The position numbers and the translations under genes are program-made. This document shows, piece by piece, positions 1-41,742 of a stretch of 64,000 nucleotides of DNA. Numbering within the stretch: the stretch's first letter is position 1; each line of letters opens with the position of its first letter. The stretch comes from Euprymna scolopes (taxonomy: Eukaryota): the NCBI GenBank assembly GCA_053919585.1, contig CM132803.1. One strand, 5' to 3'. The notes beneath the pieces were generated by a model. It saw only the letters and a program-made list of their open reading frames with translations, had not been told where the DNA came from and made no database searches.

Positions 1-1145
1 TCATCAGCTGTCAAGATAAAGGATCTCCTCCACTGCAAAGTAAGAGTAAGTTCTCCATCAAAGTCACCGATGTGAATGATGTAAGGCCACAGTTCTCTAT
101 GGAGACATTTAAGTTCTTGATTGAAGAGAATGAGAAGTCGAGATTTTCTGTTGGCTTCATCAATGCAACAGACCCAGACCTGGGAGTTGGAGGGAAACTC
201 ACCTATTCTCTGCTCACAAATAACAAACAGTTTTTACCTTTCAAAATCAAAGATGATGGCATGATTTCAGCTATTATGTCACTGGATCATGAGTTTCAAA
301 ACATTTACAAGTTTCAAGTATTTGTGAAAGATAATGGAATCCCATCTCTCAATAATACAGTCAACGTCATTGTTGAAGTGACTGATAAAAATGATAATGC
401 TCCGTATTTTACATTTCCCAGTGTCAATCCTTATAACATGGATGTTGTATATTACCGGCATCATTCAAAGAACATCACTTGTGTAAAGGCAGCTGATGGA
501 GATAGTCAAGAGAATGCATTTCTAAAATATGAAATAATCAGAGGCAATGACAAGCAGATGTTCACCATCAACCAGTACACTGGTTTGTTAACTTTCAATC
601 GGGCACTTGCGCAACAAGACGCTGGTTCCTATGAGCTAGTGTTTGTTGTCAAGGATAGTGGTAGTCCAGTTCTATCAGCAACAACTAGTATGTTTTTCAC
701 TGTGACTGTAAGCAACAAGACATCAGAAATGCTAAGTGCCGTTCATACAATCACTGAAGATAAAGTTGATCTTACATCAGTCATTATTATTACAGTTGTA
801 GCAGTGACAGTAGCAGTCATCATTACTGCTTCAATCTCGGTATGTATCATTCGCTGTAATGATCAGAGAAATGTCACATATGCCCATGCAATGGCACCAG
901 CTAATGTGGGTGTTGTTGGTCCAAGTGGCAGATATATGAGTGATCAGAGACATTTGATGTGTCCTTCAAAGCAAGGAATATCTTGGCCAACTGCTGTCAA
1001 TATAAATAAAAGTCAAGCAGATAAAATAAGAAATGCACATATAAACCAAACCAGCAGAGAATCTCATCCTGCAGAAAAGCTTCCCAGTCAGCAACAAAGA
1101 TCAGCTTCTCTTCCGCAGACACATTTGATTTCTGATTCACATCAG
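1..1145 (+). CDS. Protocadherin P1, 3' part of large exon (end of EC4, EC5, EC6, TM, juxtamembrane tail); 5' truncated by window
   Basis: Cadherin motifs DVNDVRPQF, ATDPD, LDHE, DKNDNAPYF; TM VIIITVVAVTVAVIITASISVCII; phase-0 donor CAG|GTTTG at 1145/1146. Confidence 0.93.
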
Positions 1146-1451: not shown

Positions 1452-1608
1452 AATGATAATGAAACAATATCTATAAATAGTTCAAAGCCTACACAGCATC
1501 AAGTTGGTTCTTCTGAATATCTTAATCACCCTTCACCAAAATTGTCAAGAACTGGTAGTGGATGTAGTAGAAAAGAAACTACTACCAAACAAGTGGAAGA
1601 CATTTCAG
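1452..1608 (+). CDS. P1 cytoplasmic exon 3 (NDNETISINSSKPTQHQVGSSEYLNHPSPKLSRTG...EDIS)
   Basis: caacAG acceptor, g|GTATGA donor, open frame, 157 nt (phase 0 to 1), EYLNHPSPKL homologous to exon 3 of paralogs. Confidence 0.85.
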
Positions 1609-7652: not shown

Positions 7653-10010
7653 ATGTTTTTACAAACAAATATCACTATCTCTATTTAATACATATGTGAA
7701 GCTACAGATTTGACGTTTAAAATACATGAATGGATAAGTCCTGGCACTTACCTTGAAGACATTGCTGCCGATTCTAATGTGATGGATGATGTGGCCATAT
7801 AGGATCAAAATCTCATTGCAATCAGTCTTATGGAACAGGATGAAACAAGCAGCTTTCAATTATTCTGCGTTTCTAAAAATACAGGAAACTTTTATAGAGC
7901 AAAAACATTGGATGCTGAATCTTTATGCATATTTGAAAAAAGAATGTTTTCTGATGGTAAATATTGCTGTTCAAAGAGTACATACAATAAGCAGAATATT
8001 AAAAATCAAAGTAATAATTGAAAATGTAAATCAACCAGAATTTCCAAATAAGCAAGTTAATATTGAATTTTCAGAAGACGATGGCAAAGGGATAAAACGT
8101 ATGATCTCAAATGCAGTAGATAAGAATATTGAATACATTAATTTTCAGATTATCTAGAAATTAAAAAAATATAAAGATGAAACATTTGGTTTAACTAAAA
8201 TGTAGATCGAACAGCTGATCTGTATATTATCTTAAAAAAAGATTGAACAGAGAAGTGAAAGAAAGCTACATGGTAAAAGTCATTGCTAAAGATGGTGGAC
8301 CCCCTTCCCTATTTTCACGTGTGACTGAAAACCCAAATATCTATGCATTATATTGCCAATCTTATCAAAACCCTTGATTCCAGAAAAGCAACTGATCCTG
8401 ATGGCATTCCAGTCACAGTACTCAAAAACCAAACTAACTCTCATACTTACAAATCTTTTTAAATGTTGTCTTACGGAGAAATGCTTACCAACACCTTGGA
8501 AAACTTCATCAGTAAGATGTATTGAAAAATTCTCGAGATCGATCATCTGCCCCTCACCCCAGTACAGACCAATCAGTATCCTGTACGTCATGAGTAAGTT
8601 GCTGGACTCTGTGATAAATAGAGAAGTGGTCAACCTCCTCAGCAAAAATAACCTATTCGGTGACATGCAATATGGTTCATGTTTTGCTAGATGTATAGCT
8701 GATGTGCCAGCTGTAATATCACACAAGATTAGTGAATCTCTTGACAGGGGCTTTGTTTCTAGAGCAATTGCTCTTGACATATCAAAGCCTTTTGATAATA
8801 TATAGCATAATAGTCTACTTCACAAGATTTTCAGCTGTGGAATAGCTGAAAAGTCCTCCCAATTATTAAATCCTTTCTCTCTCATAGGTTTATCATCCTG
8901 GGTCCAACTCTTTGTGATCTTCATCAATGAACTTCCAAATCACATTCTTAGACAACACTACCATCTATGGCAACACTTCAAAGGTCAACAATATCATCCA
9001 GAATAACCAAGATCTCTTTGATTCTCTCTGTACTGATCTTGAGCATGTGATGCAATAGAGAAAAGGTGGTTGATTAATTTTAATGTATCTAAAACCAAGC
9101 TTCTCTCTTTCCATCATAAATGTTCTGACCCCCCATCTAACCAACTGAAATGAATGGCTCCCATCTTGGGGAAGCACCATATTTTGACAAGCTTGTTGAA
9201 CTTATGTTCACTTCTGATCTGAAATGGAACACATGCATCAAATCTGTTGCCAAGATTGTCGGAAAAATGGTTGGATTATTCTACTGCTCTAGTAGATATC
9301 TCACTGCTGATGCAATCCTCTAACTGTATAAGAGCAAGGTATATTCTAGGATGCGAGCCTGTCTTTGTTCTATCATTATTTTCATGACAAGTACTTATCT
9401 GAGCTTCAAATTTTCACAAAAAACACTTGTCTAGCTACAACCACTATCAACAATTTCCACCACTTTATTTGTGCCTAAATCTAAACACAAATTCTATGAA
9501 CAAAGCTTCTTACCTAGAACTATCCATCTGTTCTGCTGGACTGCTTTGCGGCTGACTACAATATGATCACCTTCATATCCAATATAAAAAAGTTCTTGTT
9601 GAGCCATCCACTTAAATAATCAAATTATACCCAATTTCCAACACTATCTATTACTATGCTGTCCTGGTTATTACTGTATACTCATTAACCCTGATTAGTG
9701 ACCTTCGGACATTGACCAAACCTTGTTAAAAAAAAAATAAAAAATAAAAAAAAAATAAATAAATAAAAATAAACAAGTATTTTAGATGTTCACATTTCAG
9801 TTGCAGATGTGAATGATAATCCTCCTGTCTTCTCACAAAATTTTTATAATGTCACAATCAAAAATGAACCAAGTGAAACTTCTTCTATTGCAACTTTATC
9901 TGCCACAGATTTAGTTTATATACTGAAGCTAGAGATGAGGGTAGTTCTCCTTTGAATTCTCTTGCTATGATTTTGGTAAACTTCAGAAGTGCTCATATAA
10001 ACTAAACCAG
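7653..10010 (+). pseudogene. Protocadherin pseudogene psiA (EC1-EC2, LINE insertion, EC3 remnants, fragment of tail)
   Basis: Frameshifted and stop-containing homology to paralogs; EC2 (NIEFSEDDGKGIKRMISNAVDK) closest to P3; interrupted at 8308-9769; large deletions after ~9915 and ~9981. Confidence 0.9.
8308..9769 (+). mobile_element. 5'-truncated, decayed non-LTR retrotransposon (CR1/Jockey-group LINE, RT region to A-rich tail)
   Basis: YRPISIL, QYG, ALDISKPFD and GP-LF-IFINELP RT motifs; A-rich tail 9728-9769; Pcdh sequence resumes exactly (CCTTC|TAAACAA). Confidence 0.88.
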
Positions 10011-10114
10011 GTAAATTTTAAAATAAAAATGAGGAGATAAAATATAAGTTTTCAATACTTTAATGAAAGCTAAAAATTCAAATTTACTTAAATTTATTTA
10101 TTTTTTTATTTCAG

Positions 10115-13100
10115 TTACGATAAAATTGAATTCATCAGATTCTTTCCAGAAGCAATCATACATAAAAATGATAGTATTAACATTTTTGATATTTCTACAC
10201 ATTTGTCATGGTGTGGATTTATCATTTGAATTGAAGAAGGTAAAAGTTCTGGCACTTACCTTGGAGACATTGCTGCTGGTTCTAATGTGATGGATGATGT
10301 GGCCATACAAGATCAAAATCTCATTGCATTCAGTCTTATGGAACAGGATGGAACAAGCAGCTCTCCATTATTCCGGATTTCTAAAAATACAGGAAAACTT
10401 TATACAGCACAAACATTGGATGCGGAATCATTGTGTACATTTAACAAGGAATGTTTTGTGATGGTTGATGTTTAAAATAAAATGAACACTGGACAGATTT
10501 TTTTAGAAAAGAAATTTACATTGAGTAATGCATTAACACATAACTTGTAGGTGTTCGATGTGGAAACAAAAGATATGTATGAAGGTGCAACAAGATGTTG
10601 GTTCCTATGAGGTAGTGTTGGTTATCAAGGATAGTGGTAGCCCAGTTCTATCAGCAACAACTAGTATGTTTTTCATTATGACTGTAAGCAACAGAACATC
10701 AGAAATGCTAAGTGCCGTTCATACAATCACTGAAGATAAAGTTGATCTTACATCAATCATTATTATTACGGTTGTAGCAGTGACTGTAGCAGTGACTATT
10801 ATTGCTTCAATTTTGGTATCTATTATTCGATGTAATGATCAGAACAATGTCACATATGCCCATGCAATGGAACCAACCAATGTGGGTGTTGTTGGTCCAA
10901 GTGGAAGGCATATGAGTGCTCAGAGCTATTTGATGTGTCCTTCAAAGCCAACTACTATCAATGTAAACAAAAACCAAGCATATAAAATCAGGTGCTCATA
11001 TAAACCAAATCAGCAAGCAATCCCACATGGCAGAAAACCTTCCCAATCAACAACACAGATCGGCTTCCTTGATACAAACACAAATGTCTACTGAAGCAGA
11101 TCTACAGGTTTGTTTCTATTTATATTTCTTGCTGTAAAATTTTAATAATTTTTTTGTAAATCCCTTTTTAGCTAGGATCAAAACTAATCGACAAACTCAC
11201 CCACCTCGATATGGCTAGAGAAACTGGTTGTGAAAGTATATAGTGCAAAGCTTTGACCATTGTTTTAAACCATACTTTTGTAAATGCATTTCCTTTCTGT
11301 ATTGTTTAGTGATGGCAGTGTTACAAGTAAATATGATAAAAATACCTAAAAAAAAAGGTGGATAAAAGTAGCAAGTTTGTGTGTATGAAAAGGAACAAGT
11401 ACTAGAATGTGCTCCTACCTGAGCACGGTGCACATAGTTTCTGGTCCTCTCAAACCCTAGTCCTTCGGGTAAGTTTAACTTCTTAGCTAGATGGATAAAT
11501 GAATCCCCCATCCTTCCTGGTATTAGAGGTCGAGATCCTCCAAGGCGCCCATTCACAAATTCATCTTGGAAGGACACCATCCACTCTCCCAAACCACATT
11601 CCTATTTCTTTTTTTCTCACTTAGAGATTGTGCTTTCAGTTCTGAACAAATCAGAAAACCATGGGGAGTCTATTATTTAGAAAGGGTTGGAAGATGGGGG
11701 TTGCGAATTATTTGTTTTTGTTTTCCTATTTCCCATTTTATCCCAATAAGTTTGTGTTTATAAATATCTTTATGAAAAATGAAATTTAAAAAAATTTGAA
11801 GATGCCTAAAGTAAGATGGTCCCTAGAATAAATATAATATTGGGGTGATTGAGATCATTCCAGTTCAGAGTTGGATAGACAATTTTATCACTTTTAGCCC
11901 AAGAATGACCAACGACTAATTTCCCCTATACTTTTTATGACGCTGTGCCTAATTTGTTACATTGTATATTTTTTACTTGATAACAAATAAATAATCCAAA
12001 GTATTTGTCCTGATACAACACTCCATCTTTTCTTCTAAACGACTACAATTTTTTTACTATTTTCCCAATCCAGAGTCTTTTTAAGGAGCTAGATTTTCTC
12101 TACATTAAAAATCAACCTTATATATAACTCTGACCTCATGAAAAGGCAAGCAAATAGGAACCCCAAAGAAACATTTCATATTATTTAATAATTTTCAATA
12201 ATGTTTTGTATAATTACTAGTTAATTTGATCTAATTTTATTTGATTAATCTATATTTTTACTGTATATAATAATTATTTTATATTATTTTTTGAATTTAA
12301 AATACTCAAATTCCTCAATATCATTTGTTATTTTATCGTGACTAGCATGAAGTTAAATCATTAACTGAAAGCATCCAAAGTAAATCAGCAATTTACAACA
12401 AACCATCCCCAAAGATGACAAGAAAGGAAACTTCACAAAATAGAAGTCGGACTAATATACAATGTGATTAAGGAACAGGTAAGAAGAAGTTTTTGTTTTT
12501 AATTTTTTACAAATACAAATTTTAATTCATAACAAATGTATATATCAAACTTTTGTCACATTTTCATTATAAAAATAACATAATTTTTATGACTTCAAAA
12601 ATGTTTTTATCATTAGCTAAATCATTTTATCTATATTATTAATTCAATTTCATTTCCTATCAAGCAAAAAGCATTTAACATTGTATTTCCATCATAAAGT
12701 TTCTGTTTTTTTTCTGAATGAAACAAATTATATTTAATTCATTTTTGTTTCAATATGATTTAATATTTATTTTATTGCATTTTCTAACTAAAATTTAATT
12801 ATATAAAGCAATAAAATGAAATCAAAATGCAAATGAATTTTTTAATGATTTCTAAGTTTATCTCTAAATATTTTTAACGTTTTTTAAATTTATTTCTAAA
12901 TATTTTTAATGTTTTCTAAGTATATTTCCAAATATTCATAATATATATTTTTTTTATTATTAGTATGCTCTTTTGCTTTTGTATTTCAAGAGATGTTTAC
13001 TTCCCAGTACTGCAATTTTCCAAAACAAAGACGGCTGCCAGCACAAAAGACAGAGATGAAGCCAATGGGACAGACTGTCAACTTCCCAAGTGATACAACC

Positions 13101-13253
13101 ATTATGGCCAGGGGATTCTATACACCAAATATTTCACAAAACAATAACAACAAAGAGTCTGTGACAGAAGATAATAACGTTTGTTATACAAGTCTCTTGT
13201 CAACAGGAAATATTTATAGAAATCCAAGACCTTTACCCCCAGTACCTCACTAA
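10115..13253 (+). pseudogene. Protocadherin pseudogene psiB: deleted large exon 10115-11107, exon-3 remnant ~12346-12478, exon 4 ~12991-13253
   Basis: Acceptor and leader nearly identical to P2, first ATG changed to ACG, frameshift in EC1, EC2, EC4 and EC5 deleted, donor CAG|GTTTG at 11107; exon-3 remnant has a stop; exon 4 still open. Confidence 0.88.
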
Positions 13254-16331: not shown

Positions 16332-18818
16332 ATGATAAAATTGAATTCATCAGATTCTTTCCAGAAGCAATCATACATAAAAATGATAGTATTAACATTT
16401 ATTTTGATATTTCTACACATTTGTCATGGTGTGGATTTATCATTTAAAGTTGAAGAAGGCAAAAGTCCTGGCACTTACCTCGGAGACATTGCTGCCGATT
16501 CTAATGTGATGGATGATGTGGCCATACAAGATCAAAATCTCATTGCATTCAGTCTTATGGAACAGGATGGAACAAGCAGCTCTCCATTATTCCGAATTTC
16601 TAAAAATACAGGAAAACTTTATACAGCACAAACATTGGATGCAGAATCATTGTGTACTTCCAACAAAGAATGTTTTGTGATGGTTGATGTTGCTGTACAA
16701 AAATCAAAAAGAATCATGAAGATTTTAGAAATTAAAGTAATAATTCAGGATGTAAATGACCATCAGCCTGAATTTCCTGATAAACAAGTAAACATTGAAT
16801 ATTCAGAGGATGTAGTTCCAGGAACAAAGGTATCAATTCCAAACGCCATTGATAAAGACGTAAGTCAGAAGAATTCTCTTATTACATATTCTTTAAAAAA
16901 ACTGAAGGAAGAACCATTTCAATTGTCAATATCTAAAAAGGTTGATGGAACATCAGACCTTAGTATAACATTAGAAAAAAGACTTGACCGAGAAGTTAAA
17001 GGTTCTTTTATGATTCGAATAATTGCAAAAGATGGAGGATCTCCTCCAAAAGAAAGTATTCTCTTGGTACATATTACTGTAACTGATGTCAATGATAATC
17101 CTCCTGTTTTTTCTCAAAGCGTCTACAATGTAACAATAAAAAACAAACCAAGTGAAACTTCTTCTATTGCGACTTTATCTGCCACAGATTTAGATTCTGG
17201 TAAAAATGGAAGAGTCACTTATCATTTCAGTACAAAAACATCTGATGTTGCTAAAAGTCATTTTAAATTAAATCAACAAACTGGACAAATTTTCTTAGAA
17301 AAGAAATTTACTTTGAGTAATGTATTAACACATAATTTGTATGTTGAAGCTAAAGATGGGGGCATACCACCATTAAATTCACTTGCAATGGTTTTGGTTA
17401 ATGTAATCAATCAACAAAACAATCCACCAACAATTCATCTAAAATTCCTGTCAGCATCAGGAAAAGATTCAACATCAGTTTCTGAAGACATTGAGGTGGG
17501 AAGTTCCATTGCATATGTAAAAGTGACTGATCATGATGTTGGACAAAATGGAGAAGTGAGTTGCAATCTGCATTATGATAAATTTAAACTACAAAGTCTC
17601 GACACTAAGAAATACCAAGTAATTGTGAAAAAAGCATTGGATAGAGAAAGAGAGGCAAAGCATGAAATTATCATCAGCTGTCAAGATAAAGGATCTCCTC
17701 CACTGCAAAGTAAGAGTAAGTTCTCCATCAAAGTCACCGATGTGAATGATGTAAGGCCACAGTTCTCTATGGAGACATTTAAGTTCTTGATTGAAGAGAA
17801 TGAGAAGTCGAGATTTTCTGTTGGCTTCATCAATGCAACAGACCCAGACCTGGGAGTTGGAGGGAAACTCACCTATTCTCTGCTCACAAATAACAAACAG
17901 TTTTTACCTTTCAAAATCAAAGATGATGGCATGATTTCAGCCATTATGTCACTGGATCATGAGTTTCAAAACATTTACAAGTTTCAAGTATTTGTGAAAG
18001 ATAATGGAATCCCATCTCTCAATAATACAGTCAACGTCATTGTTGAAGTGACTGATAAAAATGATAATGCTCCGTATTTTACATTTCCCAGTGTCAATCC
18101 TTATAACATGGATGTTGTATATTACCGGCATCATTCAAAGAACATCACTTGTGTAAAGGCAGCTGATGGAGATAGTCAAGAGAATGCATTTCTAAAATAT
18201 GAAATAATCAGAGGCAATGACAAGCAGATGTTCACCATCAACCAGTACACTGGTTTGTTAACTTTCAATCGGGTGCTTGCGCAACAAGATGCTGGTTCCT
18301 ATGAGCTAGTGTTTGTTGTCAAGGATAGTGGTAGTCCAGTTCTATCAGCAACAACTAGTATGTTTTTCACTGTGACTGTAAGCAACAAGACATCAGAAAT
18401 GCTAAGTGCCGTTCATACAATCACTGAAGATAAAGTTGATCTTACATCAGTCATTATTATTACGGTTGTAGCAGTGACCGTAGCAGTCATCATTACTGCT
18501 TCAATCTCGGTATGTATCATTCGCTGTAATGATCAGAGAAATGTCACATATGCCCATGCAATGGCACCAACCAATGTGGGTGTTGTTGGTCCAAGTGGCA
18601 GATATATGAGTGATCAGAGACATTTGATGTGTCCTTCAAAGCAGGGAATATCTTGGCCAACTGCTGTCAATGTAAACCAAAGTCAAACTGATAAAATAAG
18701 AAATGCACACATAAACCAAACCAGCAGAGAAGCCAATCCTCTAGAAAAGCTTCCCAGTCAACAACAAAGATCAGCCTCTTTACCACAAACTCAAACCAGG
18801 ATACATAACGAACAACAG
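16332..18818 (+). CDS. Protocadherin P2 large exon (signal peptide, EC1-EC6, TM); start may be ATG 16383
   Basis: Acceptor ttcAG at 16329; 6 cadherin repeats, EC1 Cys-X5-Cys; donor CAG|GTATTT at 18818. Confidence 0.95.
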
Positions 18819-20570: not shown

Positions 20571-21576
20571 ATGTATTAAATAAATGATGAATAATAAATT
20601 AGGGATAAATGTTAAAGATATAAAACTATATTACTACCAGAGTGAAAAGATTTTATTTCTGGAGGTTGACTACATAAAACAAACAGACTAATATATAAAG
20701 AAAAGTTGGATTCTCGCACATAAAAATATACATTGTGCATGTCTTTGTATTATAACCCACTAGAAATTTTAAAGTAATGTCAAGCCAATCTTCTTAGGAT
20801 AGGAAATTCTCCATAGAGTGTCAAAATTATGTCTTTAGATCAATAACCTCCACTGAACAGACATATTTTATGATAGAATAGACCAACCGTGACTTGATGA
20901 GTCAGTATTTGCTATAAATTCAACTTGGAATGAGTCAAATGTTGACAAGAAAAAATAAATAAGACTCTAATACTGAAAATGTTTTCAATTTATTCTAAAT
21001 TCGTTTTGTCAGATATTTATATCATAAAAAATATGAACATTTTTTTATAATTTTCATACTCTCTAAAAAAACATTAAAAATGTAATTAATTCATTTTTTT
21101 TTAATTTAGAATGTTGGTACATAGATTTAAGTTATTACTCTGATTAGATAACTTTTCATATTAAATGTTAATATCCCTTTTAAAGACTTGCAATCTTTAT
21201 CTGAGATTTGAGTAACAAAGATAATATTTTCACATAAAATATTATCTTACTGCATTTCTTGATCATTTTTGGATAGATCTGTCTCAAACGTACATACATA
21301 TATGATCCTTCATTTAAAAATTATCATCATTTTAATCATTCATTGATCTTTTATACATTTAATTTGAAAGATCTGAATTTTTATCTTTTTAATTCTTCAG
21401 TCGTATAAACGTAAAAACAGAAGAAAATATGCCTATCATAAAACTTTATGATCAATATTATGAAGATTAAAAAATATCTTTATTTAGCTTCACTTAGTAA
21501 TCACATGTTTACTTATTTGATGCATATTTGTAATAAAGAAACATTTTTATAAACTTAAAAATTCTCTACTCAGCAG

Positions 21577-21739
21577 AATGTTATTCATGATGAAGTGGCT
21601 CTTCCGACAAGTCTCAAAAATAAGTCCCGTCAACTCAGTTCCTCTGAATATCTCAATCATTCTTCACCCAAATTGTCTCGTAGTAATAGTAGATGTAGCA
21701 GAAAGGAAACAAACCCAAATCAAAATGAACAAATTACAG
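21577..21739 (+). CDS. P2 cytoplasmic exon 3 (NVIHDEVALPTSLKNKSRQLSSSEYLNHSSPKL...EQIT)
   Basis: CAGCAG acceptor, g|GTAAGT donor, 163 nt open frame. Confidence 0.88.
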
Positions 21740-22228
21740 GTAAGTAAATTATTATGATTCTCATATCTTTTGTTAATTGATAATGAATTTGTTATTGTTC
21801 TTTTGTGTCAGTTCAACTGAATTTCATTTTTTTTAAATAGAAATTAAATTTTGTCATTGTAAAATTTCCTAAAAAATCATGATGTGGAAAGGAGCATATT
21901 AAGAATTATGAATGTTATTCATTTTTAGAAATCAATTTCAATTTTCTTAAAATTGTAGTTTCCACAATATATTCAATTTTTTTTTTAATGTTTCAATAAC
22001 TACCTTTAAAAAATAACTGATTTCCTTATAATTACAGTTATTTTTTATAACATTTGATGAAGCACCTAATATTTATTTTAACAATATTTTTTTAAAATCT
22101 ATAAATAATTATGTCTAACTTAACTTTTAAAATATAATTAATGAGCTGAAACATTCGTCAATGCAGGGTTTCACAAATGTTTCTCTTCTGCACACCAGTT
22201 CAAATAAAAAAGTGCATTATTCAGGTTT

Positions 22229-23616: not shown

Positions 23617-24652
23617 TTACATGGAAAAGTATAAACATTAAATAAGATTTTCAAAATAAATTTTATAATCTTAAATATTGTTACAATGGAATGATAAAAT
23701 GTATCTCTTTCTCAGCTTCACCAGTTTTATAGCATAGGAAAATCAAAGATTGGTTAAGACTCAAAAACAAAATAATAGAAGGTTTACAGTTGTCAAGTGG
23801 TTTCATTGTTTGATTTAACATAGATAAAACCATCTTAAGATATGGTATAAGCCAGTTTGCTGCTTCTTTGATGTAGTTCAGAATACAGACAGACATAATC
23901 TGCATTATAATATACTAGTAAACATATGCTCCTGATTGCATATTTTTGATAGTATACATAATCTAAGTGTTGAATTTGGAATTATTGGAATAAATACCAT
24001 ATTGTCAACAGAACAAATGGTTAATATTATAGCTTGAAGCAGTTACATTCGCTATGTAAACATTATTTTCTTTCAATACATTATAAACAAAATATACAAT
24101 TTTAGAATTTTTTTAGACATGAATGTGTCTGAAAAAGTATTATTTTTTTTATAAAACATCATTGAGATGTAAAATAAAAATCAGATTTAGGTAAGAAAGT
24201 TAAGTAAAGCAATTTCTAAATTAAATACCCTGACTTTTAATTTAATCATTTTAAATAAGACTTAGAGAATTATTAATAACCAATACGTTCTGTATAGCTA
24301 AAATGCAGCTGAAATATCATTTTTTAAAGTGCTTAATCAGTAGTCATTACATTTATTCATTTTCAAGGCATTATAAATAAATTACTGTCTTGTGTTATTT
24401 TACTTTTTGTGGTTTGTAAATGAAAGGGAAAGCGGCGAGTCATATTTAAAAAAAAAATTTAAAATGACCCCGCCCCCTTTCTTCTATTTACAAACAGAGA
24501 AATAGAAATGAAAATTGTAAAAGGGACTTGCTGCTATTTAGGATAAAAATAAGCAAAGTACATGTTTCTAAAATTATATCAAGCTGATGTGTATGTTTTT
24601 TACTATAAATTAAGCAGTTAAATAGTATTTTATAATTTTTATTTGTTTACAG

Positions 24653-24918
24653 ATGTTTACACTTCCCAATACTGCAATTCTCCATCAAAACATAGAGGAC
24701 AGTCATCACAAGAAACAGAGATGAGACCATTGGGACAGACTGTCAACTATCCAAGTGATACAACTATTGTAGCCAGGGGATTCTATACACCAAGTCTTTC
24801 ACAAAACAATGACAACAAAGACTCTGTGGCAGAGGATAGTAATTCTTCTGATACAAGTCTGCCATCAACAGGAAATATTTATAGAAACCCAAGACCCTTA
24901 CCACCAGTTCCTCATTAA
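24653..24918 (+). CDS. P2 terminal exon 4
   Basis: tacAG acceptor in phase 1; VYTSQYCNSPSK...RNPRPLPPVPH*. Confidence 0.9.
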
Positions 24919-26607: not shown

Positions 26608-29079
26608 ATGATGACACAGGAATTCCTATTGATAATCAAAAGTATGTTGCTACAAATGTGTCTCTTAATTTATTGTGTAGACTTTTCTTACTGTGTTGAC
26701 CTGACTTTCAAAGTAGAAGAAGGTAAAAGTCCTGGCACTTACCTTGGAGACATTGCTGCCGATTCTAATGTGATGGATGATGTGGCCATACAAGATCAAA
26801 ATCTCATTGCATTCAGTCTTATGGAACAGGATGGAACAAGCAGTTCTCCATTATTCCGGATTTCTAAAAATACAGGAAAACTCTATACAGCACAAACATT
26901 GGATGCTGAATCTCTGTGTACTTATGGAAAAGAATGTTTCTTAATGGTTGATGTTGCGGTTCAAAAATCTAAAAGAATTATGAAGATTTTAGAAATCAAA
27001 GTAATAATTGAAGATGTAAATGATCATCAACCAGAATTTCCGGATAAACAAGTTAATATTGAGTTTGATGAAGATGATGGCAAAGGAGTGAAACGTATGA
27101 TCTCAAATGCAATAGATAAAGATATTGGACGCATTAATTCTCAGATTACATACGAGTTAAAAAAATATAAAAATGAACCATTTGATTTATCAGTCTCTAA
27201 AAATGTGGACGGAACAGCTGATCTTTACATTATTCTGAAAGAAAGATTAGATAGAGAAGTGAAAGAAAGCTACATGGTAAAAGTTATTGCTAAAGATGGC
27301 GGATCTCCTTCTAAACAAAGTATTTTAGATGTTCACATTTCAGTTACAGATATGAATGATAATCCTCCTGTCTTTTCACAAAATCTTTATAATGTCACAA
27401 TCAAAAATGAACCAAGTGAAACTTCTTCAATTGCAACTTTATCTGCCACAGATTTAGATTCTGGTAAAAATGGAAGAGTCACTTATCATTTCAGTACAAA
27501 AACATCGGATGTTGCTAAAAGTCATTTTAAATTAAATCAACAAACTGGACAGATTTTCTTAGAAAAGAAATTTACATTGAATAATATATTAATACATAAT
27601 TTGTATGTTGAAGCACAAGATCAAGGAAATCCTCCATTAACAGCAAAGTCAATGGTATTAGTCAATGTGAACAACCAACAGAATAACCCTCCAATGATTC
27701 ATCTCAAGTTCCTGTCAGCATCTGGAAAAGATTCAACATCAGTTTCTGAAAACATTGAGGTGGGAAGTTCTATTGCATATGTAAAAGTGACTGATCATGA
27801 TGTTGGACAAAATGGAGAAGTGAGTTGCAATCTGCATTATGATAAATTTAAACTACAAAGTCTCGACACTAAGAAATACCAAGTAATTGTGAAAAAAGCA
27901 TTGGATAGAGAAAGAGAGGCAAAGCATGAAATTATCATCAGCTGTCAAGATAAAGGATCTCCTCCACTGCAAAGTAAGAGTAAGTTCTCCATCAAAGTCA
28001 CCGATGTGAATGATGTAAGGCCACAGTTCTCTATGGAGACATTTAAGTTCTTGATTGAAGAGAATGAGAAGTCGAGATTTTCTGTTGGCTTCATCAATGC
28101 AACAGACCCAGACCTGGGAGTTGGAGGGAAACTCACCTATTCTCTGCTCACAAATAACAAACAGTTTTTACCTTTCAAAATCAAAGATGATGGCATGATT
28201 TCAGCCATTATGTCACTGGATCATGAGTTTCAAAACATTTACAAGTTTCAAGTATTTGTGAAAGATAATGGAATCCCATCTCTCAATAATACAGTCAACG
28301 TCATTGTTGAAGTGACTGATAAAAATGATAATGCTCCGTATTTTACATTTCCCAGTGTCAATCCTTATAACATGGATGTTGTATATTACCAGCATCATTC
28401 AAAGAACATCACTTGTGTAAAGGCAGCTGATGGAGATAGTCAAGAGAATGCATTTCTAAAATATGAAATAATCAGAGGCAATGACAAGCAGATGTTCACC
28501 ATCAACCAGTACACTGGTTTGTTAACTTTCAATCGGGTGCTTGCGCAACAAGATGCTGGTTCCTATGAGCTAGTATTTGTTGTCAAGGATAGTGGTAGCC
28601 CAGTTCTATCAGCAACAACTAGTATGTTTTTCACTGTCACTGTAAGCAACAAGACATCAGAAATGCTAAGTGCCGTTCATACAATCACTGAAGATAAAGT
28701 TGATCTTACATCAGTCATTATTATTACAGTTGTAGCAGTGACCGTAGCAGTCATCATTACTGCTTCAATCTCGGTATGTATCATTCGCTGTAATGATCAG
28801 AGAAATGTCACATATGCCCATGCAATGGCACCAGCCAATGTGGGTGTTGTTGGTCCAAGTGGCAGATATATGAGTGATCAGAGACATTTGATGTGTCCTT
28901 CAAAGCAGGGAATATCTTGGCCAACTGCTGTCAATGTAAACAAAAGCCAAGCAGATAAAATAAGAAGTGCACATATTAACCAAACCAACAGAGAATCTAA
29001 TCCTCTTGAAAAGCTTCCCAGTCAGCAACAAAGATCAGCTTCCTTACCTCATACTGAAACAAATTACAATGAACAACAG
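26608..29079 (+). CDS. Protocadherin P3 large exon
   Basis: Acceptor at 26593; 6 EC plus TM; donor CAG|GTAAGT at 29079. Confidence 0.95.
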
Positions 29080-30586
29080 GTAAGTCTTAACCTCTGTTTA
29101 CATTATTTTTTATGATAATTCTTTATAAAGAATGTCAAAGTTTTAGTTTCATGTTTACAAGAAACTTATGAATGAAATGTTTCTTATTTTAAATTTCGAT
29201 ATCAAGTGAAACAATAATGAGCTGGCAAATCCATTTAATATTACACAAAAAATATGCCCATATTATGCTCGTGGTAATGTTGGAAAAGAATATATCAGCT
29301 TTGGAATGTGTGTTGTGTGGTTTCTGCCTTAGCTGTACACACACACACACAGATAACTACTCTTTTATATAATCGACTAATACGGTTATCTGGGAACATA
29401 AACAACAAAATAGAAAAGTTAAAAAGCATGTGCAACATCCTTCTATTAAATCCTCTGTTTTTCTGCTCTTCTCCTTTCAATATCCTCCTTTTCTCTCTCA
29501 CCCCGTATCACGTTTTCTCTGACAAATTGATGAATTATTACATAATATTAAAATTTGTCCTAACCGTACATGACCTCCACTGGCTTATTCTAATAACCCT
29601 CAGAAGAATGAATATTAAAAGAAATGTGCCTATACTTTACCCAAGGCAATAATGAAAAACAAAAATACAATATACTTTTAAAATTGTTTTTAATTTTCTT
29701 TTTATTTATCAGATAGTTACATAATACAAAACAGTGGGAGTTTTCCCTTTTTTCTTAGCATATTTTATAGTTTAGATTTTTTTTTCACCCTAAATTAAAA
29801 TATAACAATTTTTTTATAGGTCTAGAGTGTGGATTTGTAGATTCAAGTAATTAACAACTAGCTTACTTGAAAAATGTTTGCTACTTCAAATATTTGAAAT
29901 AAAAATTTTTCATAATTAAATTTTGCCATAGCTTTTTTCACATTTATTCATATAGACATAAACATTTTGTTGAATTTTTATATAAATTCATTTTTTTAAT
30001 ATGGCTGTAAAGAAAGAAATAATAAACAATATTCGTAAACAGAAATATTTATTAAATCAAAATTAAAGCAATCATTGAATAAAAATATAATAAAGAATAG
30101 TTAATGAATAAAATGCTCAGCATGAAACCGTTACTTACTTAATGAATGTGTTTCACATAAACAAATACGTTTTTATAAACTTAAAAATATTTCTATTTCA
30201 TCAATGATAACAGATTTTAGTAACAAAGGTAATATTTTCACATAAAATATGATCTTACTGCATTTGTTGATCATCTTTGGACAGATTTGTCTGTATTTGT
30301 CTTAAACATAAATACATATATAATCACCATTTAAAAATTGTCTTTTTATCATTCATTAATATTTTATAGATTTGATTTCAAAGATTCGAATTTTTATCAT
30401 TTTAATTCATCAGCTGTATAAATGTAAAAAAACAAAAATATGCTTAGAATAAAACCTTTCGATTAATATTATGAATGTTTTTTTTTTAAATTTTTTAAAT
30501 CAGCTTCACTTAACTTAATAATCATACATTTGTTTGATGTATGTTCGTAAACATTTTTATAAACTTAAAAATTCTCTACTCAGCAG

Positions 30587-30749
30587 AATGTTATTCATGA
30601 TGAAGTGGCTCTTCCAACAAGTCTCAAAAATAAGTCCCGTCAACTCAGTTCCTCTGAATATCTCAATCATTCTTCACCCAAATTATCTCGTAGTAATAGT
30701 AGATGTGGCAGAAATCAAACAAACCCAAATCAAAATGAACAAATTACAG
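30587..30749 (+). CDS. P3 cytoplasmic exon 3
   Basis: CAGCAG acceptor, g|GTAAGT donor; almost identical to P2 exon 3. Confidence 0.88.
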
Positions 30750-32950
30750 GTAAGTAAATTATTATGATCCTCATATCTTTTGTTAATTGATAATGAATTT
30801 GTTATTGTTCTTTTGGTTTTTTAATACAATTGAATTGCCATTTTTTTTTTAAATAACAATGCAATTTTCATTTTTGCAAAATTTTCTAAAAAGAAATCAT
30901 AATACTGAAATATGTATGTAGAAAATTATGAACATTATTAGTCTTTAGAAATCTATTTTAATTTCTCATCTTTTGTGTTTTGTTATCCTTTTTTGTAAAT
31001 TGAGTTTATGAAGAAAGATTTTCATTTAATTAAAACTAATTCTTTTACATTTAAATGATTTTTAGAAAAATATTTTTTTGTAGTATTCAAATCTTAAGAA
31101 ATGTAAATTTTAAATTCATTAAGTTTTCATTTAATAAAGAAATAAAAATAAATAATTTAGAATAATAAATAAACTTTTTTTGCAATATTTAATAAGATTT
31201 TTCTTTTTATTAGAAAATCATAATAAATTGTTTCAATTTAATAAATATAAGAACAAAGAAAAGTCGTATTTTCTGTCCATGGGTGTTCCAAAAGTAACCT
31301 TGAAAACTATACAGGATACACTTATAAAACTTACATATTCCAATCACATTTGGGTAAACAATTATAACCATCAGCTATGAATGAAAAATTTTACAAATTA
31401 AAAATCACATAAAAATAACATCTTAATATAAAGAGACAGTCTTAAAAATAATGGTAGACCAAAACAAAAACATTTAAGAAGCTTTATCATGAATTTGTAT
31501 GGTATTGATACCTATTTTAATACATTGTATGAACTAATATTTTTTTAAAAAAAACCAGTAATAAGAAAATGAAAGAACTAAAAATGTATAAATTATTTGA
31601 GAGAGAAACTGTTTAAAACAATATTTTGCTAAGATATCTAAATGTAACAATTAAATATTTTTAATTCATATATTTTGTTGTTATAATATTTATTAAATAA
31701 AAATATTCAAAATATTAGTAAAATTCATTTAATTTTTTAATCAATATTAAATTCATCAGGATCATCTAAAAATTAATTATTTCATGTTTAGTTTATCATA
31801 GATGGCATAACAAAGCTAATATATATTTCATTTAAGTTCCATGATTTTTTTATATAAAGTATTTTAATAAATTTGGTCAGATAGATGAGAAAAATAAACT
31901 TATAGTAGCGAATACTGCTAAAGAGTTAAATATTTTGGTTTCAATTCTAGCTAATGACATCCAAGTAATATTTTTTGTTTTACTTTTGTAATCACTACGA
32001 TATATTGGGTAAAATATAATAATCAATATAAAATTGGCTCTATAATAATAAATACAAAATTTGTATGAATTAAAATATCATACTTAGGCATATTTTATGA
32101 CCGGGTAATGCTGGGCGGTTTGTTGGTTTATTATCATAATATACATTGTGTGTATAATTATATAATTAAGGACCAGGCATTGCCCAGATGTAAACTACTT
32201 AGACGGAATTTGTTTAAATTTATAAAGCTATCAAGTTTAGTATTATGCTAGATATAACCTTGACACATTGGATCACAACAGCTATGACTATCTGTTCATT
32301 CTATATTATCCTTATGAATAATTTAAAAGTAACAAAACCTATTATTTTGATATCTAATTTACAGGTGTTCAATGAGTATGAATATGGTATGTAAATTAAA
32401 TTAAAAAACGGAGTAAGTCCTTTTCTAAATGCTCCGGAATATTGAAATATTAAAGAATGGTTGAATGAACTTGAAGTGAGATGAGGTCAAGAAATATAGA
32501 TAACTAAGTAAGAAAAAGATAGGTAACTTATTTAGTTTATTAGAAATTATGACTAATTAGAACAATTAAAACATATTTTTTCAAACATAATTCACGGTAC
32601 ATTTTAACATGTATTTTATACTATTCAAGTATATAGGAAAAAATCCACAAAAATGAACTCACATTTAGTATAATAATAATAGATTGCAGTAACTACACAC
32701 TAAATTAAATACTTTAAAGTTCTCTATAATTTTGTAATTCATAAAAGTAATTTGAATTATTTATTGCAATTTTGGTAGGTTTTCAAATTATATCTTAAAA
32801 ATGTCTAAAAAAAAACAACAAAAAAACCCCCCAAAAAACGCCAAGTTAAAGAATTTGGAAAACTGTTATTGTGATATCATAGGAATATTAGTTTAATACA
32901 TTTTTTTGTAAATATTATTTTAATAATGTTTATATTATTGCCATTTTCAG

Positions 32951-33216
32951 ATGTATACTCATCACAGTACTGCAACTCTCCATCAAAACAAAGAGGGTTG
33001 CGAGTACAAGAGACAGAGATGAGACCATTGGGACAGACTGTCAACTACCCAAGTGATACAACCATTGTGGCCAGAGGATTCTACACACCAAGCCTTTCAC
33101 AAAACAATGACAATAAAGACTCTGTGACAGAAGACAGTAACTCTTCTGATACAAGTCTCCCGTCAACAGGAAATATTTATAGAAATCCAAGACCTTTACC
33201 CCCTGTACCCCAATAA
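32951..33216 (+). CDS. P3 terminal exon 4
   Basis: ttcAG acceptor in phase 1; VYSSQYCN...RNPRPLPPVPQ*. Confidence 0.9.
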
Positions 33217-35875: not shown

Positions 35876-38329
35876 ATGTTTATCACAGAGATGTCATTAT
35901 CCATTTATGTATTATTCCTTATTCTGGCCATATCTAAAGGTGCAGATCTGACATTTAAAGTAGAAGAAGGCAAAAGTCCTGGCACTTACCTTGGAGACAT
36001 TGCTGCCGATTCTAATGTGATGGATGATGTGGCCATACAAGATCAAAATCTCATTGCATTCAGTCTTATGGAACAGGATGGAACAAGCAGCTCTCCATTA
36101 TTCCGGATTTCTAAAAATACAGGAAAACTTTATACAGCACAAACATTGGATGCCGAGTCACTATGTACTTCCAACAAAGAATGTTTTGTGATGGTTGATG
36201 TTGCTGTACAGAAATCTAAAAGAATAATGAAGATATTAGAAGTAAAAGTTAATGTACAAGATGTGAATGATCATCAACCAGAATTTCCTGACAAACAAGT
36301 TAACATTGAATTTTCTGAAAGGGATGCAAAAGGGACAAAATTATCGATTCCAAACGCCATTGATAAAGATGTAAGTCAGAAGAATTCCCTTATTACATAT
36401 TCTTTAAAAAAACTGAAGGAAGAACCATTTCAATTGTCAATATCTAAAAAGGTTGATGGAACATCAGACCTTAGTATAACATTAGAAAAAAGACTTGACC
36501 GAGAAGTGAAAGATTCTTTTATGATTCGAATAATTGCAAAAGATGGAGGATCTCCTCCAAAAGAAAGTATTCTCTTGGTACATATTACTGTTACTGATGT
36601 CAATGATAATCCTCCTGTTTTTTCTCAAAGCGTCTACAATGTAACAATAAAAAACAAACCAAGTGAAACTTCTTCTATTGCAACTTTATCTGCCACAGAT
36701 TTAGATTCTGGTAAAAATGGAAGAGTCACTTATCATTTCAGTACAAAAACGTCTGATGTTGCTAAAAGTCATTTTAAATTAAATCAACAAACTGGACAGA
36801 TTTTCTTAGAAAAGAAATTTACACTAAGTAATGTATTAACACATAATTTGTATGTTGAAGCTAAAGATGGAGGAATCCCACCATTAAATTCACTTGCAAT
36901 GGTTTTGGTTAATGTAATTAATCAACAAAATAACCCACCAACAATTCATCTAAAATTCCTGTCAGCATCCGGAAAAGATTCAACATCAGTTTCTGAAAAC
37001 ATTGAGGTGGGAAGTTCCATTGCATATGTAAAAGTGACTGATCATGATGTTGGACAAAATGGAGAAGTGAGTTGCAATCTGCATTATGATAAATTTAAAC
37101 TACAAAGTCTCGACACTAAGAAATACCAAGTAATTGTGAAAAAAGCATTGGATAGAGAAAGAGAGGCAAAGCATGAAATTATCATCAGCTGTCAAGATAA
37201 AGGATCTCCTCCACTGCAAAGTAAGAGTAAGTTCTCCATCAAAGTCACCGATGTGAATGATGTAAGGCCACAGTTCTCTATGGAGACATTTAAGTTCTTG
37301 ATTGAAGAGAATGAGAAGTCGAGATTTTCTGTTGGCTTCATCAATGCAACAGACCCAGACTTGGGAGTTGGAGGGAAACTCACCTATTCTCTGCTCACAA
37401 ATAACAAACAGTTTTTACCTTTCAAAATCAAAGATGATGGCATGATTTCAGCCATTATGTCACTAGATCATGAGTTTCAAAACATTTACAAGTTTCAAGT
37501 ATTTGTGAAAGATAATGGAATCCCATCTCTCAATAATACAGTCAACGTCATTGTTGAAGTGACTGATAAAAATGATAATGCTCCGTATTTTACATTTCCC
37601 AGTGTCAATCCTTATAACATGGATGTTGTATATTACCGGCATCATTCAAAGAACATCACTTGTGTAAAGGCAGCTGATGGAGATAGTCAAGAGAATGCAT
37701 TTCTAAAATATGAAATAATCAGAGGCAATGACAAGCAGATGTTCGCCATCAACCAGTACACTGGTTTGTTAACTTTCAATCGGGTGCTTGCGCAACAAGA
37801 TGCTGGTTCCTATGAGCTAGTGTTTGTTGTCAAGGATAGTGGTAGTCCAGTTCTATCAGCAACAACTAGTATGTTTTTCACTGTGACTGTAAGCAACAAG
37901 ACGTCAGAAATGCTAAGTGCCGTTCATACAATCACTGAAGATAAAGTTGATCTTACATCAGTCATTATTATTACGGTTGTAGCAGTGACCGTAGCTGTTA
38001 TCATTACTGCTTCAATCTCGGTATGTATCATTCGCTGTAATGACCAGAGAAATGTCACATATGCTCATGCAATGGCACCAGCCAATGTGGGTGTTGTTGG
38101 TCCAAGTGGCAGATATATGAGTGATCAAAGACATTTGATGTGTCCTTCAAAGCAGGGAATATCTTGGCCAACTGCTGTCAATGTAAACCAAAATCAATCA
38201 GATAAAGTAAGAAATGCACACATAAACCAAACTAACAGAGAATCTCATCCTACAGAAAAGCTTCCCAGTCAACAACAGAGATCAACCTCCCTTCCTCATA
38301 ACCAGACTTCAGCAAGTATTGAATCACGG
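35876..38329 (+). CDS. Protocadherin P4 large exon
   Basis: Acceptor at 35830; 6 EC plus TM; donor CGG|GTAAGT at 38329. Confidence 0.95.
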
Positions 38330-41574: not shown

Positions 41575-41610
41575 AGTTTTAAATGTCTGATATGTATTAA
41601 TACTAACTTG

Positions 41611-41742
41611 NNNNNNNNNNNNNNNNNNNNNNNNNNNNNNNNNNNNNNNNNNNNNNNNNNNNNNNNNNNNNNNNNNNNNNNNNNNNNNNNNNNNNNNNNN
41701 NNNNNNNNNNNNNNNNNNNNNNNNNNNNNNNNNNNNNNNNNN
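41611..41742. other. Assembly gap (N run)
   Basis: N characters. Confidence 1.

What the first reader, a model, noticed from the sequence alone, without database searches (positions are those of the whole stretch)
17446..18680. ~1.2-kb EC4-EC6-TM-juxtamembrane block is almost identical at the nucleotide level across paralogs
Seen: only scattered SNPs, including at synonymous sites, among P1-P7 (P1 only partly in window), whereas introns, signal peptides and exon 3 are strongly diverged. Established: ectopic gene conversion homogenises specific ectodomains in vertebrate Pcdh clusters, and EC5-EC6 mediate promiscuous cis-dimerisation there. Inference: ongoing conversion maintains a constant region, possibly so that any isoform can cis-pair with any other. 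By eye, third positions look more GC-rich here, as expected under GC-biased conversion; this was not computed.
Basis: partly seen in the sequence, partly recalled or inferred. Interest (0 to 1): 0.75.

Follow-up and report, generated by a model that had tools for sequence, protein, structure and literature searches.

The report
Gene-converted constant block in cephalopod protocadherins
Seven neighbouring nerve-cell adhesion (protocadherin) genes of a squid- or cuttlefish-like animal keep about 1.2 kb, coding for their membrane-near half, almost letter-identical by copying it between genes, while their outer recognition domains stay old and different; fish protocadherin clusters do the same, so this is an independent example of a known process.

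Summary
Among six complete protocadherin exons and one partial one, the stretch 17446-18680 (EC4-EC6, transmembrane helix, about 50 juxtamembrane residues) is 98.6% identical pairwise. A core at 17508-18233 is 99.7% identical. Synonymous divergence (dS) is 0.04-0.085 in the block, against 1.1-1.3 in EC2 and the end of EC3. Introns and intergenic DNA cannot be aligned.

Recurrent non-allelic gene conversion is strongly supported. Against 12-13 paralogs from a second cephalopod assembly, the block groups by genome (100/100 support, 18 fixed differences). The variable parts interleave instead (window P6 is sister to P0010, and a window-only clade is rejected at p about 1e-45). Short-read contigs from four independent runs reproduce the core with no differences, so assembly collapse is very unlikely.

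GC3 is higher in the big block (0.34 against 0.19). It is not higher in two smaller homogenised blocks in EC1 and EC3, so the case for GC-biased conversion is only partial. The cis-pairing rationale remains untested.

Regional conversion of EC4-EC6 is well documented in teleost protocadherin clusters. For cephalopods, the papers I could read mention conversion only at whole-gene level. This scan has already reported the same pattern in two other arrays of this genome (s1-244837, s1-295510). It is a new member of a known kind.

The parts
17446..18680 (+). Homogenised block in P2 (EC4-EC6, TM, about 50 juxtamembrane residues), as given in the finding
   Evidence: Mean pairwise identity 98.6%. 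dS 0.04-0.085 against 1.1-1.3 in the variable parts.
17508..18233 (+). Ultra-core of the block in P2 (most of EC4, EC5, first half of EC6)
   Evidence: 99.68% pairwise identity. Only 7 polymorphic sites, each with a minority A or T against a majority G or C; six are singletons. Contigs covering 17508-18203 have no differences in 4 independent runs.
18234..18680 (+). Second tier of the block in P2 (second half of EC6, TM, juxtamembrane)
   Evidence: 97.7% identity. 26 polymorphic sites with conflicting sharing patterns; 45 of 120 informative site pairs show four gametes.
1..1010 (+). Block copy in P1 (partial; the window starts inside it)
   Evidence: 98.0-99.2% identical to the other copies.
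27710..28944 (+). Block copy in P3
   Evidence: Coordinate mapping; alignment.
36957..38191 (+). Block copy in P4
45281..46515 (+). Block copy in P5
52163..53397 (+). Block copy in P6
60275..61509 (+). Block copy in P7
16440..16610 (+). Smaller homogenised block in EC1 (P2 coordinates)
   Evidence: Third-position diversity 0.02-0.06. dS 0.22. One difference from the second genome is fixed in all paralogs.
17110..17270 (+). Smaller homogenised block in EC3 (P2 coordinates)
   Evidence: Third-position diversity 0.04-0.09. dS 0.21. GC3 only 0.145. One fixed difference.
16640..17090 (+). Old variable segment 1 (end of EC1 plus EC2; P2 coordinates)
   Evidence: dS 1.28, dN/dS 0.12. It groups with paralogs of the other genome.
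17300..17440 (+). Old variable segment 2 (end of EC3 and the EC3-EC4 linker; P2 coordinates)
   Evidence: dS 1.10. P5 and P6 are identical here, as are P2 and P4.
16332..18818 (+). Large coding exon of P2 (ATG to CAG|GT donor)
   Evidence: ORF. Donor. Six cadherin repeats by Pfam.
24650..24918 (+). Last coding (tail) exon of P2. Each gene has its own copy (also 2649-2911, 32949-33216, 41317-41575, 49141-49406, 55645-55898).
   Evidence: 87.8% identity, dS 0.41. It is not part of the homogenised block.
10016..11084 (+). Internally deleted pseudogene copy that has drifted away from the homogenised sequence
   Evidence: 26 of 360 sites carry private changes where all functional copies agree, spread evenly over codon positions.

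Best explanation
The block is a constant region kept uniform by concerted evolution. Recurrent short-tract non-allelic gene conversion between the tandem protocadherin exons overwrites the roughly 1.2 kb coding for EC4-EC6, the transmembrane helix and the proximal tail. EC2 and the end of EC3 stay outside most tracts and keep their ancient divergence.

Shown here:
- The repeat units are old. Introns and intergenic DNA cannot be aligned, and variable-part dS exceeds 1.
- The block is young and genome-specific.
- The same banding exists in a second genome.
- The homogeneity is present in raw-data-derived contigs, not only in this assembly.

Inferred:
- Conversion limits itself, because it needs high identity and so stops where divergence begins.
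- Selection against loss of recognition diversity holds the boundaries in place, which would explain why they are the same in two genomes.
- The uniform membrane-proximal module gives every isoform of an array the same non-recognition functions (cis association, membrane anchoring, proximal signalling). That would be the functional counterpart of the shared constant exons of vertebrate clusters, which this array lacks.
For: 1. dS varies 15- to 30-fold along one exon. Of 356 polymorphic sites in the mature exon, only 33 lie in the 1173 bp from 17508 to 18680.
2. There is no blastn similarity between units outside exons, apart from a few patches. Whole-unit duplication or unequal crossing-over therefore cannot account for the identity.
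3. Comparison with 12-13 paralogs of a second cephalopod assembly (P0001-P0013). In the block, identity is about 1.00 within the window, about 0.99 within the second genome, and 0.82-0.96 between them. There are 18 fixed differences, including 2 indels, and none are fixed in the variable parts.
4. The maximum-likelihood tree of the block gives both genomes as clades with 100/100 support. The tree of the variable columns gives P6+P0010 at 100/98 and {P3,P5,P6,P7,P0010,P0012} at 100/99, and rejects a window-only clade (delta lnL 106, p-AU about 1e-45). Forcing P6+P0010 on the block costs 84 lnL.
5. The identity profiles of the two genomes run in parallel (r = 0.92).
6. Within the block, 45 of 120 informative site pairs show all four gametes. 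Sawyer-type runs are significant for P5-P6 and P2-P4 (p <= 0.0005).
7. Contigs from four runs in four studies carry 17508-18203 with 0 differences. Their k-mer depth is roughly 12-24 times that of the gene-specific pieces. The four variants listed between 18234 and 18680 are exactly SNPs that distinguish the assembled paralogs.
8. A pseudogene copy carries 7% private changes where all intact copies agree.
9. Block GC3 is 0.34 against 0.19. Pseudogene decay implies an equilibrium GC of about 0.26.
10. Precedent: fugu protocadherin subclusters have a 3' exon region more than 99% identical, with a boundary in EC4/EC5 and raised GC3 (PMC1852091).
Against: - DNA of the second genome could not be fetched. 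The between-genome test is therefore at protein level only, and between-species dS in the block is unknown.
- The species identities of the second assembly and of the four runs are hidden or coded.
- The reads evidence is short-read contigs, not long reads spanning each gene. Contigs drop rare variants, and 63 of the 'other letter' rows were not shown.
- The core is identical under four organism labels, while one of those runs (X13) is 5-10% diverged on P2-specific parts. If that run is from another species, conversion alone does not explain the identity between species, and added nucleotide-level constraint is needed.
- GC3 is not raised in the EC1 and EC3 blocks, and is lowest in the EC3 block.
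- No conversion event was observed directly.
- The functional rationale (cis association) is by analogy only.
Confidence: 0.88

Rival explanations
1. Assembly or polishing artefact. The copies really differ in the block, but repeat collapse or consensus polishing made them look alike.
For: Near-identical repeats of 1.2 kb are a classic site of such artefacts. No long reads were available to me.
Against: - Each copy sits between unique flanks and keeps its own SNPs, with consistent patterns.
- Contigs built independently from four public runs show one core sequence with 0 differences, at 12-24 times the depth of gene-specific pieces. The four variants listed between 18234 and 18680 are ones also present in the assembly.
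- A second, independent assembly shows the same banding.
Confidence: 0.03
2. Recent expansion from one founder gene, followed by very fast (diversifying) divergence of EC2 and the end of EC3. No conversion is involved.
For: Protocadherin recognition domains are reported to be under diversifying selection in mammals (cited in PMC1852091).
Against: - Synonymous divergence in the variable parts is saturated (dS 1.1-1.3), with dN/dS of 0.12-0.15. This is old divergence under purifying selection, not fast protein evolution.
- Introns and intergenic DNA cannot be aligned.
- Variable parts have closer relatives in another genome than in the same array.
Confidence: 0.02
3. Nucleotide-level purifying selection alone, without copying between genes. 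Candidates are an embedded RNA structure needed for A-to-I editing, which is widespread in coleoids, or a DNA element.
For: The core is identical in contigs under four organism labels, while gene-specific parts differ by up to 5-10% in one of them. Block GC3 stays above the mutational equilibrium, although all 7 polymorphic sites in the core carry a minority A or T against a majority G or C.
Against: Constraint cannot produce 18 differences that are fixed in all 6 paralogs of one genome and all 12 of the other, nor the conflicting trees. A-to-G changes are not enriched in the presumed RNA run (table 1). As an additional force acting on top of conversion it remains open (my estimate about 0.25).
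Confidence: 0.04
4. Unequal crossing-over with birth-and-death turnover. In this reading the block is simply the part retained from recently recombined chimeric units.
For: Tandem arrays undergo unequal exchange. Pseudogene fragments and an internally deleted copy lie between P1 and P2.
Against: Unequal exchange homogenises whole repeat units, including their introns and spacers, and those are unalignable here. The identity has two internal boundaries inside one exon, and these are the same in all copies and in a second genome.
Confidence: 0.03

Closest known systems
Regional gene conversion in teleost clustered protocadherins (fugu: Yu et al. 2007, PMC1852091; zebrafish: Noonan et al. 2004, as cited there)
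   Same: - The 3' part of a roughly 2.4-kb exon is more than 99% identical among paralogs of a subcluster, synonymous sites included.
- There is a discrete boundary at EC4/EC5.
- EC2-EC3 are spared and carry the diversity.
- GC3 is higher in the homogenised part.
- The homogenised part is specific to each subcluster.
   Different: - This is a cephalopod family that expanded independently of the vertebrate clusters, as stated in PMC9068888.
- Each gene is complete, with its own downstream exons and no shared constant exons.
- The boundary lies one domain earlier, at EC3/EC4.
- Extra homogenised islands sit in EC1 and EC3.
- GC3 rises only to 0.34 in a very AT-rich genome.
Mammalian and Xenopus clustered protocadherins (alpha, beta, gamma)
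   Same: Tandem same-orientation arrays of large exons encoding six EC domains plus the TM. dS is lowest in EC5/EC6 and highest in EC2/EC3 (PMC4978886). The window protein aligns end to end with gamma-B4 EC1-6 (6e6b) and with delta-2 protocadherin structures.
   Different: In vertebrates the common cytoplasmic part comes from three shared constant exons joined by splicing. Here there is no shared exon, and uniformity is achieved at the DNA level inside each gene's own exon. Homogenisation is much stronger than in mouse or Xenopus.
Published statements on cephalopod protocadherin arrays (Albertin et al. 2022, PMC9068888; Styfhals et al. 2019, PMC6339937, citing Albertin et al. 2015)
   Same: Sub-arrays of closely related, same-orientation, multi-exon genes with interspersed pseudogene fragments. 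[quoted passage not shown]
   Different: Those statements rest on whole-gene trees. None of the papers I could read gives a domain-resolved analysis, a synonymous-site analysis or a between-genome test.

Membership tests
Protocadherin (six-EC, single-pass, large-exon cadherin) | Six tandem extracellular cadherin repeats | tested here: met
   Pfam Cadherin PF00028 matches in 6 stretches, E 5.6e-79, plus Cadherin_2 at the N-terminus. Residues 39-682 align with EC1-6 structures 6vg1, 6e6b and 6vg4.
Protocadherin (six-EC, single-pass, large-exon cadherin) | Ectodomain and transmembrane helix encoded in one large exon | tested here: met
   Uninterrupted ORFs of 829-839 codons. A hydrophobic stretch of about 26 residues follows EC6. 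A GT donor lies about 35 codons after the block.
Vertebrate-type clustered protocadherin locus | Variable exons spliced to constant exons shared by the whole cluster | tested here: not met
   Each gene has its own tail exon, 87.8% identical between genes, with its own acceptor site and stop codon. This agrees with PMC9068888.
Vertebrate-type clustered protocadherin locus | Tandem array of paralogous large exons in one orientation | tested here: met
   Seven + strand exons spaced 7-10 kb apart.
Region-restricted concerted evolution by gene conversion | Synonymous divergence sharply lower in one part of the gene than in the rest and than in flanking non-coding DNA | tested here: met
   dS 0.04-0.085 against 1.1-1.3. 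The flanks cannot be aligned.
Region-restricted concerted evolution by gene conversion | Paralogs group by genome in the homogenised part and by orthology elsewhere | tested here: met
   18 fixed differences, conflicting trees, AU tests with p from 1e-5 to 1e-45. This is at protein level only, because DNA of the second genome was unavailable.
Region-restricted concerted evolution by gene conversion | Mosaic variant sharing or tracts between paralogs | tested here: met
   Four-gamete conflicts in 45 of 120 site pairs within 450 bp. Significant concordant runs by permutation test.
Region-restricted concerted evolution by gene conversion | Not an assembly artefact | tested here: inconclusive
   Four independent short-read contig sets and a second assembly agree. 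Long reads spanning single genes were not available.
GC-biased gene conversion | Raised GC3 in converted tracts, relative to unconverted parts and to the mutational equilibrium | tested here: inconclusive
   GC3 is 0.34 in the big block against 0.19 in the variable parts (p 3e-5 to 2e-3). Equilibrium GC from pseudogene decay is about 0.26. The EC3 block is at 0.145 and the EC1 block at 0.28. Substitutions could not be polarised without outgroup DNA.
Promiscuous EC5-EC6 cis-dimerisation module (vertebrate cPcdh) | EC6-dependent cis dimers between different isoforms | not testable with these tools
   This needs biophysics or cell assays. I found no cephalopod data.

The most novel reading that the evidence does not exclude
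Each cephalopod protocadherin array carries its own DNA-level 'constant region without a constant exon'. In other arrays of the second genome, identity in the membrane-proximal half is 0.92-1.0 within three of the four arrays (one is looser, 0.55-0.93), but 0.48-0.86 between arrays. This region may define array-specific compatibility groups for cis assembly and signalling.

In addition, the core may be held by nucleotide-level constraint beyond conversion. It is identical under four organism labels, while gene-specific parts differ by up to 10% in one of them. That would point to a function of the DNA or RNA sequence itself, for instance as an RNA-editing substrate or a homology platform.
Probability: 0.15. 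Interest if true: 0.75.

Novelty: new member of a known kind. Interest (0 to 1): 0.5.

Why it matters
Cephalopods and vertebrates enlarged their protocadherin families independently, and both have large brains. This array has arrived at the same protein logic as vertebrate clusters: old, diverse outer domains on a uniform membrane-proximal module. It gets there by a different genetic route, copying between complete genes instead of splicing to shared exons.

That strengthens the case that cephalopod protocadherins act as a combinatorial recognition code. It also makes the idea testable. The exact boundaries tell experimenters which segments to swap in adhesion assays, and which fragment to test for isoform-independent cis association.

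It carries a practical warning as well. Whole-gene trees of these families are misleading, and orthology should be inferred from EC2 and the end of EC3 only.

Tried and rejected
- Fetching DNA of the closest relatives failed. The contigs of ENA sample ERZ21867824, and the NCBI Acanthosepion pharaonis contig, were reported as too large. Between-genome dS and a polarised test of GC-biased conversion could therefore not be done.
- L001, an A. pharaonis transcript contig from a different subfamily, was fetched but not used further.
- Albertin et al. 2015 (PMC4795812) is not held in the library.
- A search for functional binding data on cephalopod protocadherins returned nothing relevant.
- Diversifying selection as the cause of the variable bands is rejected: dN/dS is 0.12-0.15 with saturated dS.
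- Unequal crossing-over is rejected because the spacers are unalignable.
- Pure nucleotide constraint is rejected as the sole cause because of the fixed differences.
- I did not predict a structure or model a cis dimer. A monomer model would not test the cis-pairing idea.
- The depth ratios are used only as a rough sign that the core exists in many copies. The tool itself warns that contig depth is not a copy number.
Full report
**What is in the window.** The window is very AT-rich: GC is 0.21-0.35 in 2-kb windows. It carries seven large open reading frames on the + strand at intervals of 7-10 kb.
- P1 is cut by the window start (72-1202).
- P2 to P7 are complete, at 829-839 codons each.
- P2 has six Pfam cadherin repeats (E 5.6e-79). 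It aligns from residue 39 to 682 with solved EC1-6 ectodomains of delta-2 and gamma protocadherins (6vg1, 6e6b, 6vg4).
- The nearest named proteins are protocadherins of the cuttlefish Acanthosepion pharaonis, at 57-62% identity. Thirteen unnamed proteins from one ENA assembly are 83-87% identical. The animal is therefore a decapodiform cephalopod, and its own proteins are not in the database.
- Each large exon ends at a GT donor about 35 codons after the block. For P2 this is CAG|GT at 18818/18819.
- Each gene has its own last coding exon of about 85 codons, 1.4-5.8 kb downstream.

**Check of the observation.** All parts of the observation hold, with some refinements.
- On a codon alignment of P2-P7, third-position diversity is 0.00-0.09 from about 17450 to 18680 in P2 coordinates. 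It is 0.35-0.51 in EC2 and at the end of EC3.
- Nei-Gojobori dS is 0.039 for 17442-18213 and 0.085 for 18216-18680. It is 1.28 for the end of EC1 plus EC2, 1.10 for the end of EC3, 1.37 for the signal peptide and 0.71 for the distal tail.
- Pairwise nucleotide identity is 98.6% over the stated interval, 99.68% over a core at 17508-18233, and 97.7% over 18234-18680. P1 is 98.0-99.2% identical to the others.
- The SNP list shows only 7 polymorphic sites in the 726-bp core, six of them singletons. There are 26 in the next 447 bp.
- Both edges are gradients of about 50-150 bp.
- By the linker motifs and the structural alignment, the block begins at the EC3/EC4 linker and ends about 50 residues after the transmembrane helix.
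- Outside exons, blastn finds nothing between the units except the tail exon, a short middle exon and a few patches.
- The tail exon is 87.8% identical with dS 0.41. It is clearly less homogenised than the block, so 'strongly diverged' is relative.
- Two further homogenised islands lie in EC1 (about 16440-16610) and EC3 (about 17110-17270), each with dS about 0.2.

**Is it conversion?** The decisive test is a comparison with a second genome. I aligned the six window proteins with P0001-P0013.
- In the block, identity is about 1.00 within the window, about 0.99 within the other genome, and only 0.82-0.96 between them.
- There are 18 positions fixed for one state in all six window paralogs and for another in all twelve full-length paralogs of the other genome. 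Two of these are indels.
- In the variable parts, the within-genome and between-genome identities are equal (0.6-0.8) and nothing is fixed.
- Each small island also carries one fixed difference.
- A maximum-likelihood tree of the block separates the two genomes with 100/100 support.
- A tree of the variable columns places P6 with P0010 (100/98). It places P3, P5, P6 and P7 with P0010 and P0012 (100/99), and P2 and P4 with P0001. It rejects a window-only clade (delta lnL 106, p-AU about 1e-45).
- Forcing the variable-part groupings onto the block costs 84-116 lnL.

One exon therefore has two histories. Its recognition part predates the split of the two genomes, and its membrane-proximal part was homogenised after the split, separately in each genome. 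Parallel substitution in 6 and 12 genes at 18 sites is not credible, so constraint alone cannot explain this. The within-genome identity profiles of the two genomes run in parallel (r = 0.92), so the boundaries are stable.

**Further support inside the window.**
- Of 120 pairs of informative sites in the block, 45 show all four gametes within 450 bp. This is what patchy exchange would produce.
- A Sawyer-type permutation test finds significant runs of concordance between P5 and P6 (61 polymorphic sites, 17279-17432) and between P2 and P4 (58 sites, 16879-16989). Both have p <= 0.0005. Exchange therefore also happens pairwise in the variable zone.
- An internally deleted pseudogene at 10016-11084 carries 26 private changes in 360 sites where all intact copies agree. 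These are spread evenly over codon positions. A copy that has dropped out of the functional set drifts away, and the assembly resolves diverged copies without difficulty.

**Assembly collapse.** Only Logan contigs were available, and no long reads. The evidence still points against collapse.
- In four runs from four studies, the core is present as contigs without a single difference from P2. One example is a 696-bp contig covering 17508-18203 in X7.
- These contigs have k-mer depths roughly 12-24 times those of contigs on gene-specific parts (X1: 384-389 against 16-21; X7: 47.5 against 3.4-4.3; X13: 643-652 against 28-30).
- The tool warns that such depths are not copy numbers. I use them only to say that many identical copies exist.
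- All four runs have a contig starting at 17508, just past the paralog SNP at 17507.
- The four variants reported between 18234 and 18680 (18335, 18479, 18570, 18678) are the same ones that distinguish the assembled paralogs.
- If the copies really differed, many low-depth variant contigs would be expected instead.
- No variants of the second-genome type were listed in the core. The second assembly is therefore a different taxon from these four runs.

**GC3.**
- The big block has GC3 of 0.34, with fourfold-site GC of 0.365 in the core. The variable parts have 0.19 (Fisher p 3e-5 to 2e-3 for each copy taken alone).
- Pseudogene decay gives 16 GC-to-AT changes against 8 AT-to-GC changes. That implies an equilibrium GC of about 0.26, close to the non-coding GC.
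- All 7 polymorphic sites in the core carry a minority A or T where the majority has G or C.
- The block is thus held above mutational equilibrium, as GC-biased conversion predicts.
- However, the EC3 island has the lowest GC3 of the exon (0.145) and the EC1 island has 0.28. Substitutions could not be polarised. Selection or history remain possible explanations.

**Generality.**
- Four other arrays of the second genome also have membrane-proximal halves that are much more alike within an array than between arrays: 0.92-1.0 in three of them, with one array looser at 0.55-0.93, against 0.48-0.86 between arrays. The start points differ between arrays, falling in EC4, EC5 or EC6.
- This scan has already reported the same pattern in two other arrays of this genome: s1-295510, about 375 kb upstream, and s1-244837, about 48 Mb downstream. 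I did not re-test those.

**Comparison with what is known.**
- The closest precedent is the teleost clusters. In fugu, paralogs of a subcluster share a 3' exon region more than 99% identical, with a discrete boundary in EC4 or EC5 and raised GC3, and EC1-EC3 carry the diversity (PMC1852091).
- In mouse and Xenopus the same gradient is present but weaker (PMC4978886).
- For cephalopods, the literature I could read only suggests conversion, and only from whole-gene trees (PMC9068888, PMC6339937).
- It also states that cephalopods lack shared constant exons. The per-gene tail exons here confirm that.
- The finding is therefore an independent, domain-resolved case of a known process. It is not a new mechanism.

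**Mechanism and function.**
- Shown: old repeat units; a young, genome-specific block; stable boundaries; mosaic variants.
- Inferred: short conversion tracts start within the identical region and end where mismatches accumulate. Events that erase recognition diversity are removed by selection.
A more general statement fits the data equally well, namely that the array needs one common module for cis assembly, anchoring and proximal signalling.

**Unexplained.** The core is identical under four organism labels, while the only X13 contigs on P2-specific parts are 5-10% diverged. If X13 is another species, conversion cannot be the whole story, and nucleotide-level constraint must be added. The labels are coded and no further read calls were available.

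Noticed in passing
window 1515-1549, 21646-21680, 30656-30690, 47883-47917, 53934-53968: The large exon ends in phase 0 but the tail exon is read in phase 1, so a middle coding exon must exist. A short conserved coding element ('..EYLNHPSPKL..') lies in each intron at these places and is the likely candidate. Its exact splice sites were not determined.
   Followed up: partly
window 21539-21805 vs 30549-30815: P2 and P3 share 267 bp at 97.8% identity around that middle exon, inside introns that otherwise cannot be aligned. This looks like a local conversion or duplication patch between neighbouring genes.
   Followed up: no
window 7691-8307, 9770-9914, 10016-11084, 12991-13253: Protocadherin pseudogene pieces lie between P1 and P2. 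There is an EC1-EC2 fragment (77-83% identical to the genes). There is a 145-bp piece of the EC3 island still 96-98.6% identical to P3, P5 and P6. There is also an internally deleted copy with its own tail-exon copy.
   Followed up: partly
window 17279-17432 (P5/P6 equivalents) and 16879-16989 (P2/P4 equivalents): Particular gene pairs share long runs of identical polymorphic sites inside the 'variable' zone (61 and 58 sites, p <= 0.0005). Variable cassettes are therefore also exchanged pairwise.
   Followed up: partly
window about 17487-17507: Contigs of runs X1, X7 and X13 branch at 17487 into a version coding 'SEGIKIGSS' instead of 'SEDIEVGSS'. Half of the second genome's paralogs carry that same variant. 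This is a paralog polymorphism shared across genomes, sitting exactly at the left edge of the core.
   Followed up: no
window 16595, 16997, 17171, 17420, 18689: At these P2 positions all four runs show a different base at full depth. P2 in this assembly therefore carries private alleles or small errors there, or P2-specific words are swamped by the other paralogs.
   Followed up: no
window 41611-41742, 63476-63610, 63678-63925: Runs of N. The tail exon of P7 probably lies in or near the last two.
   Followed up: no
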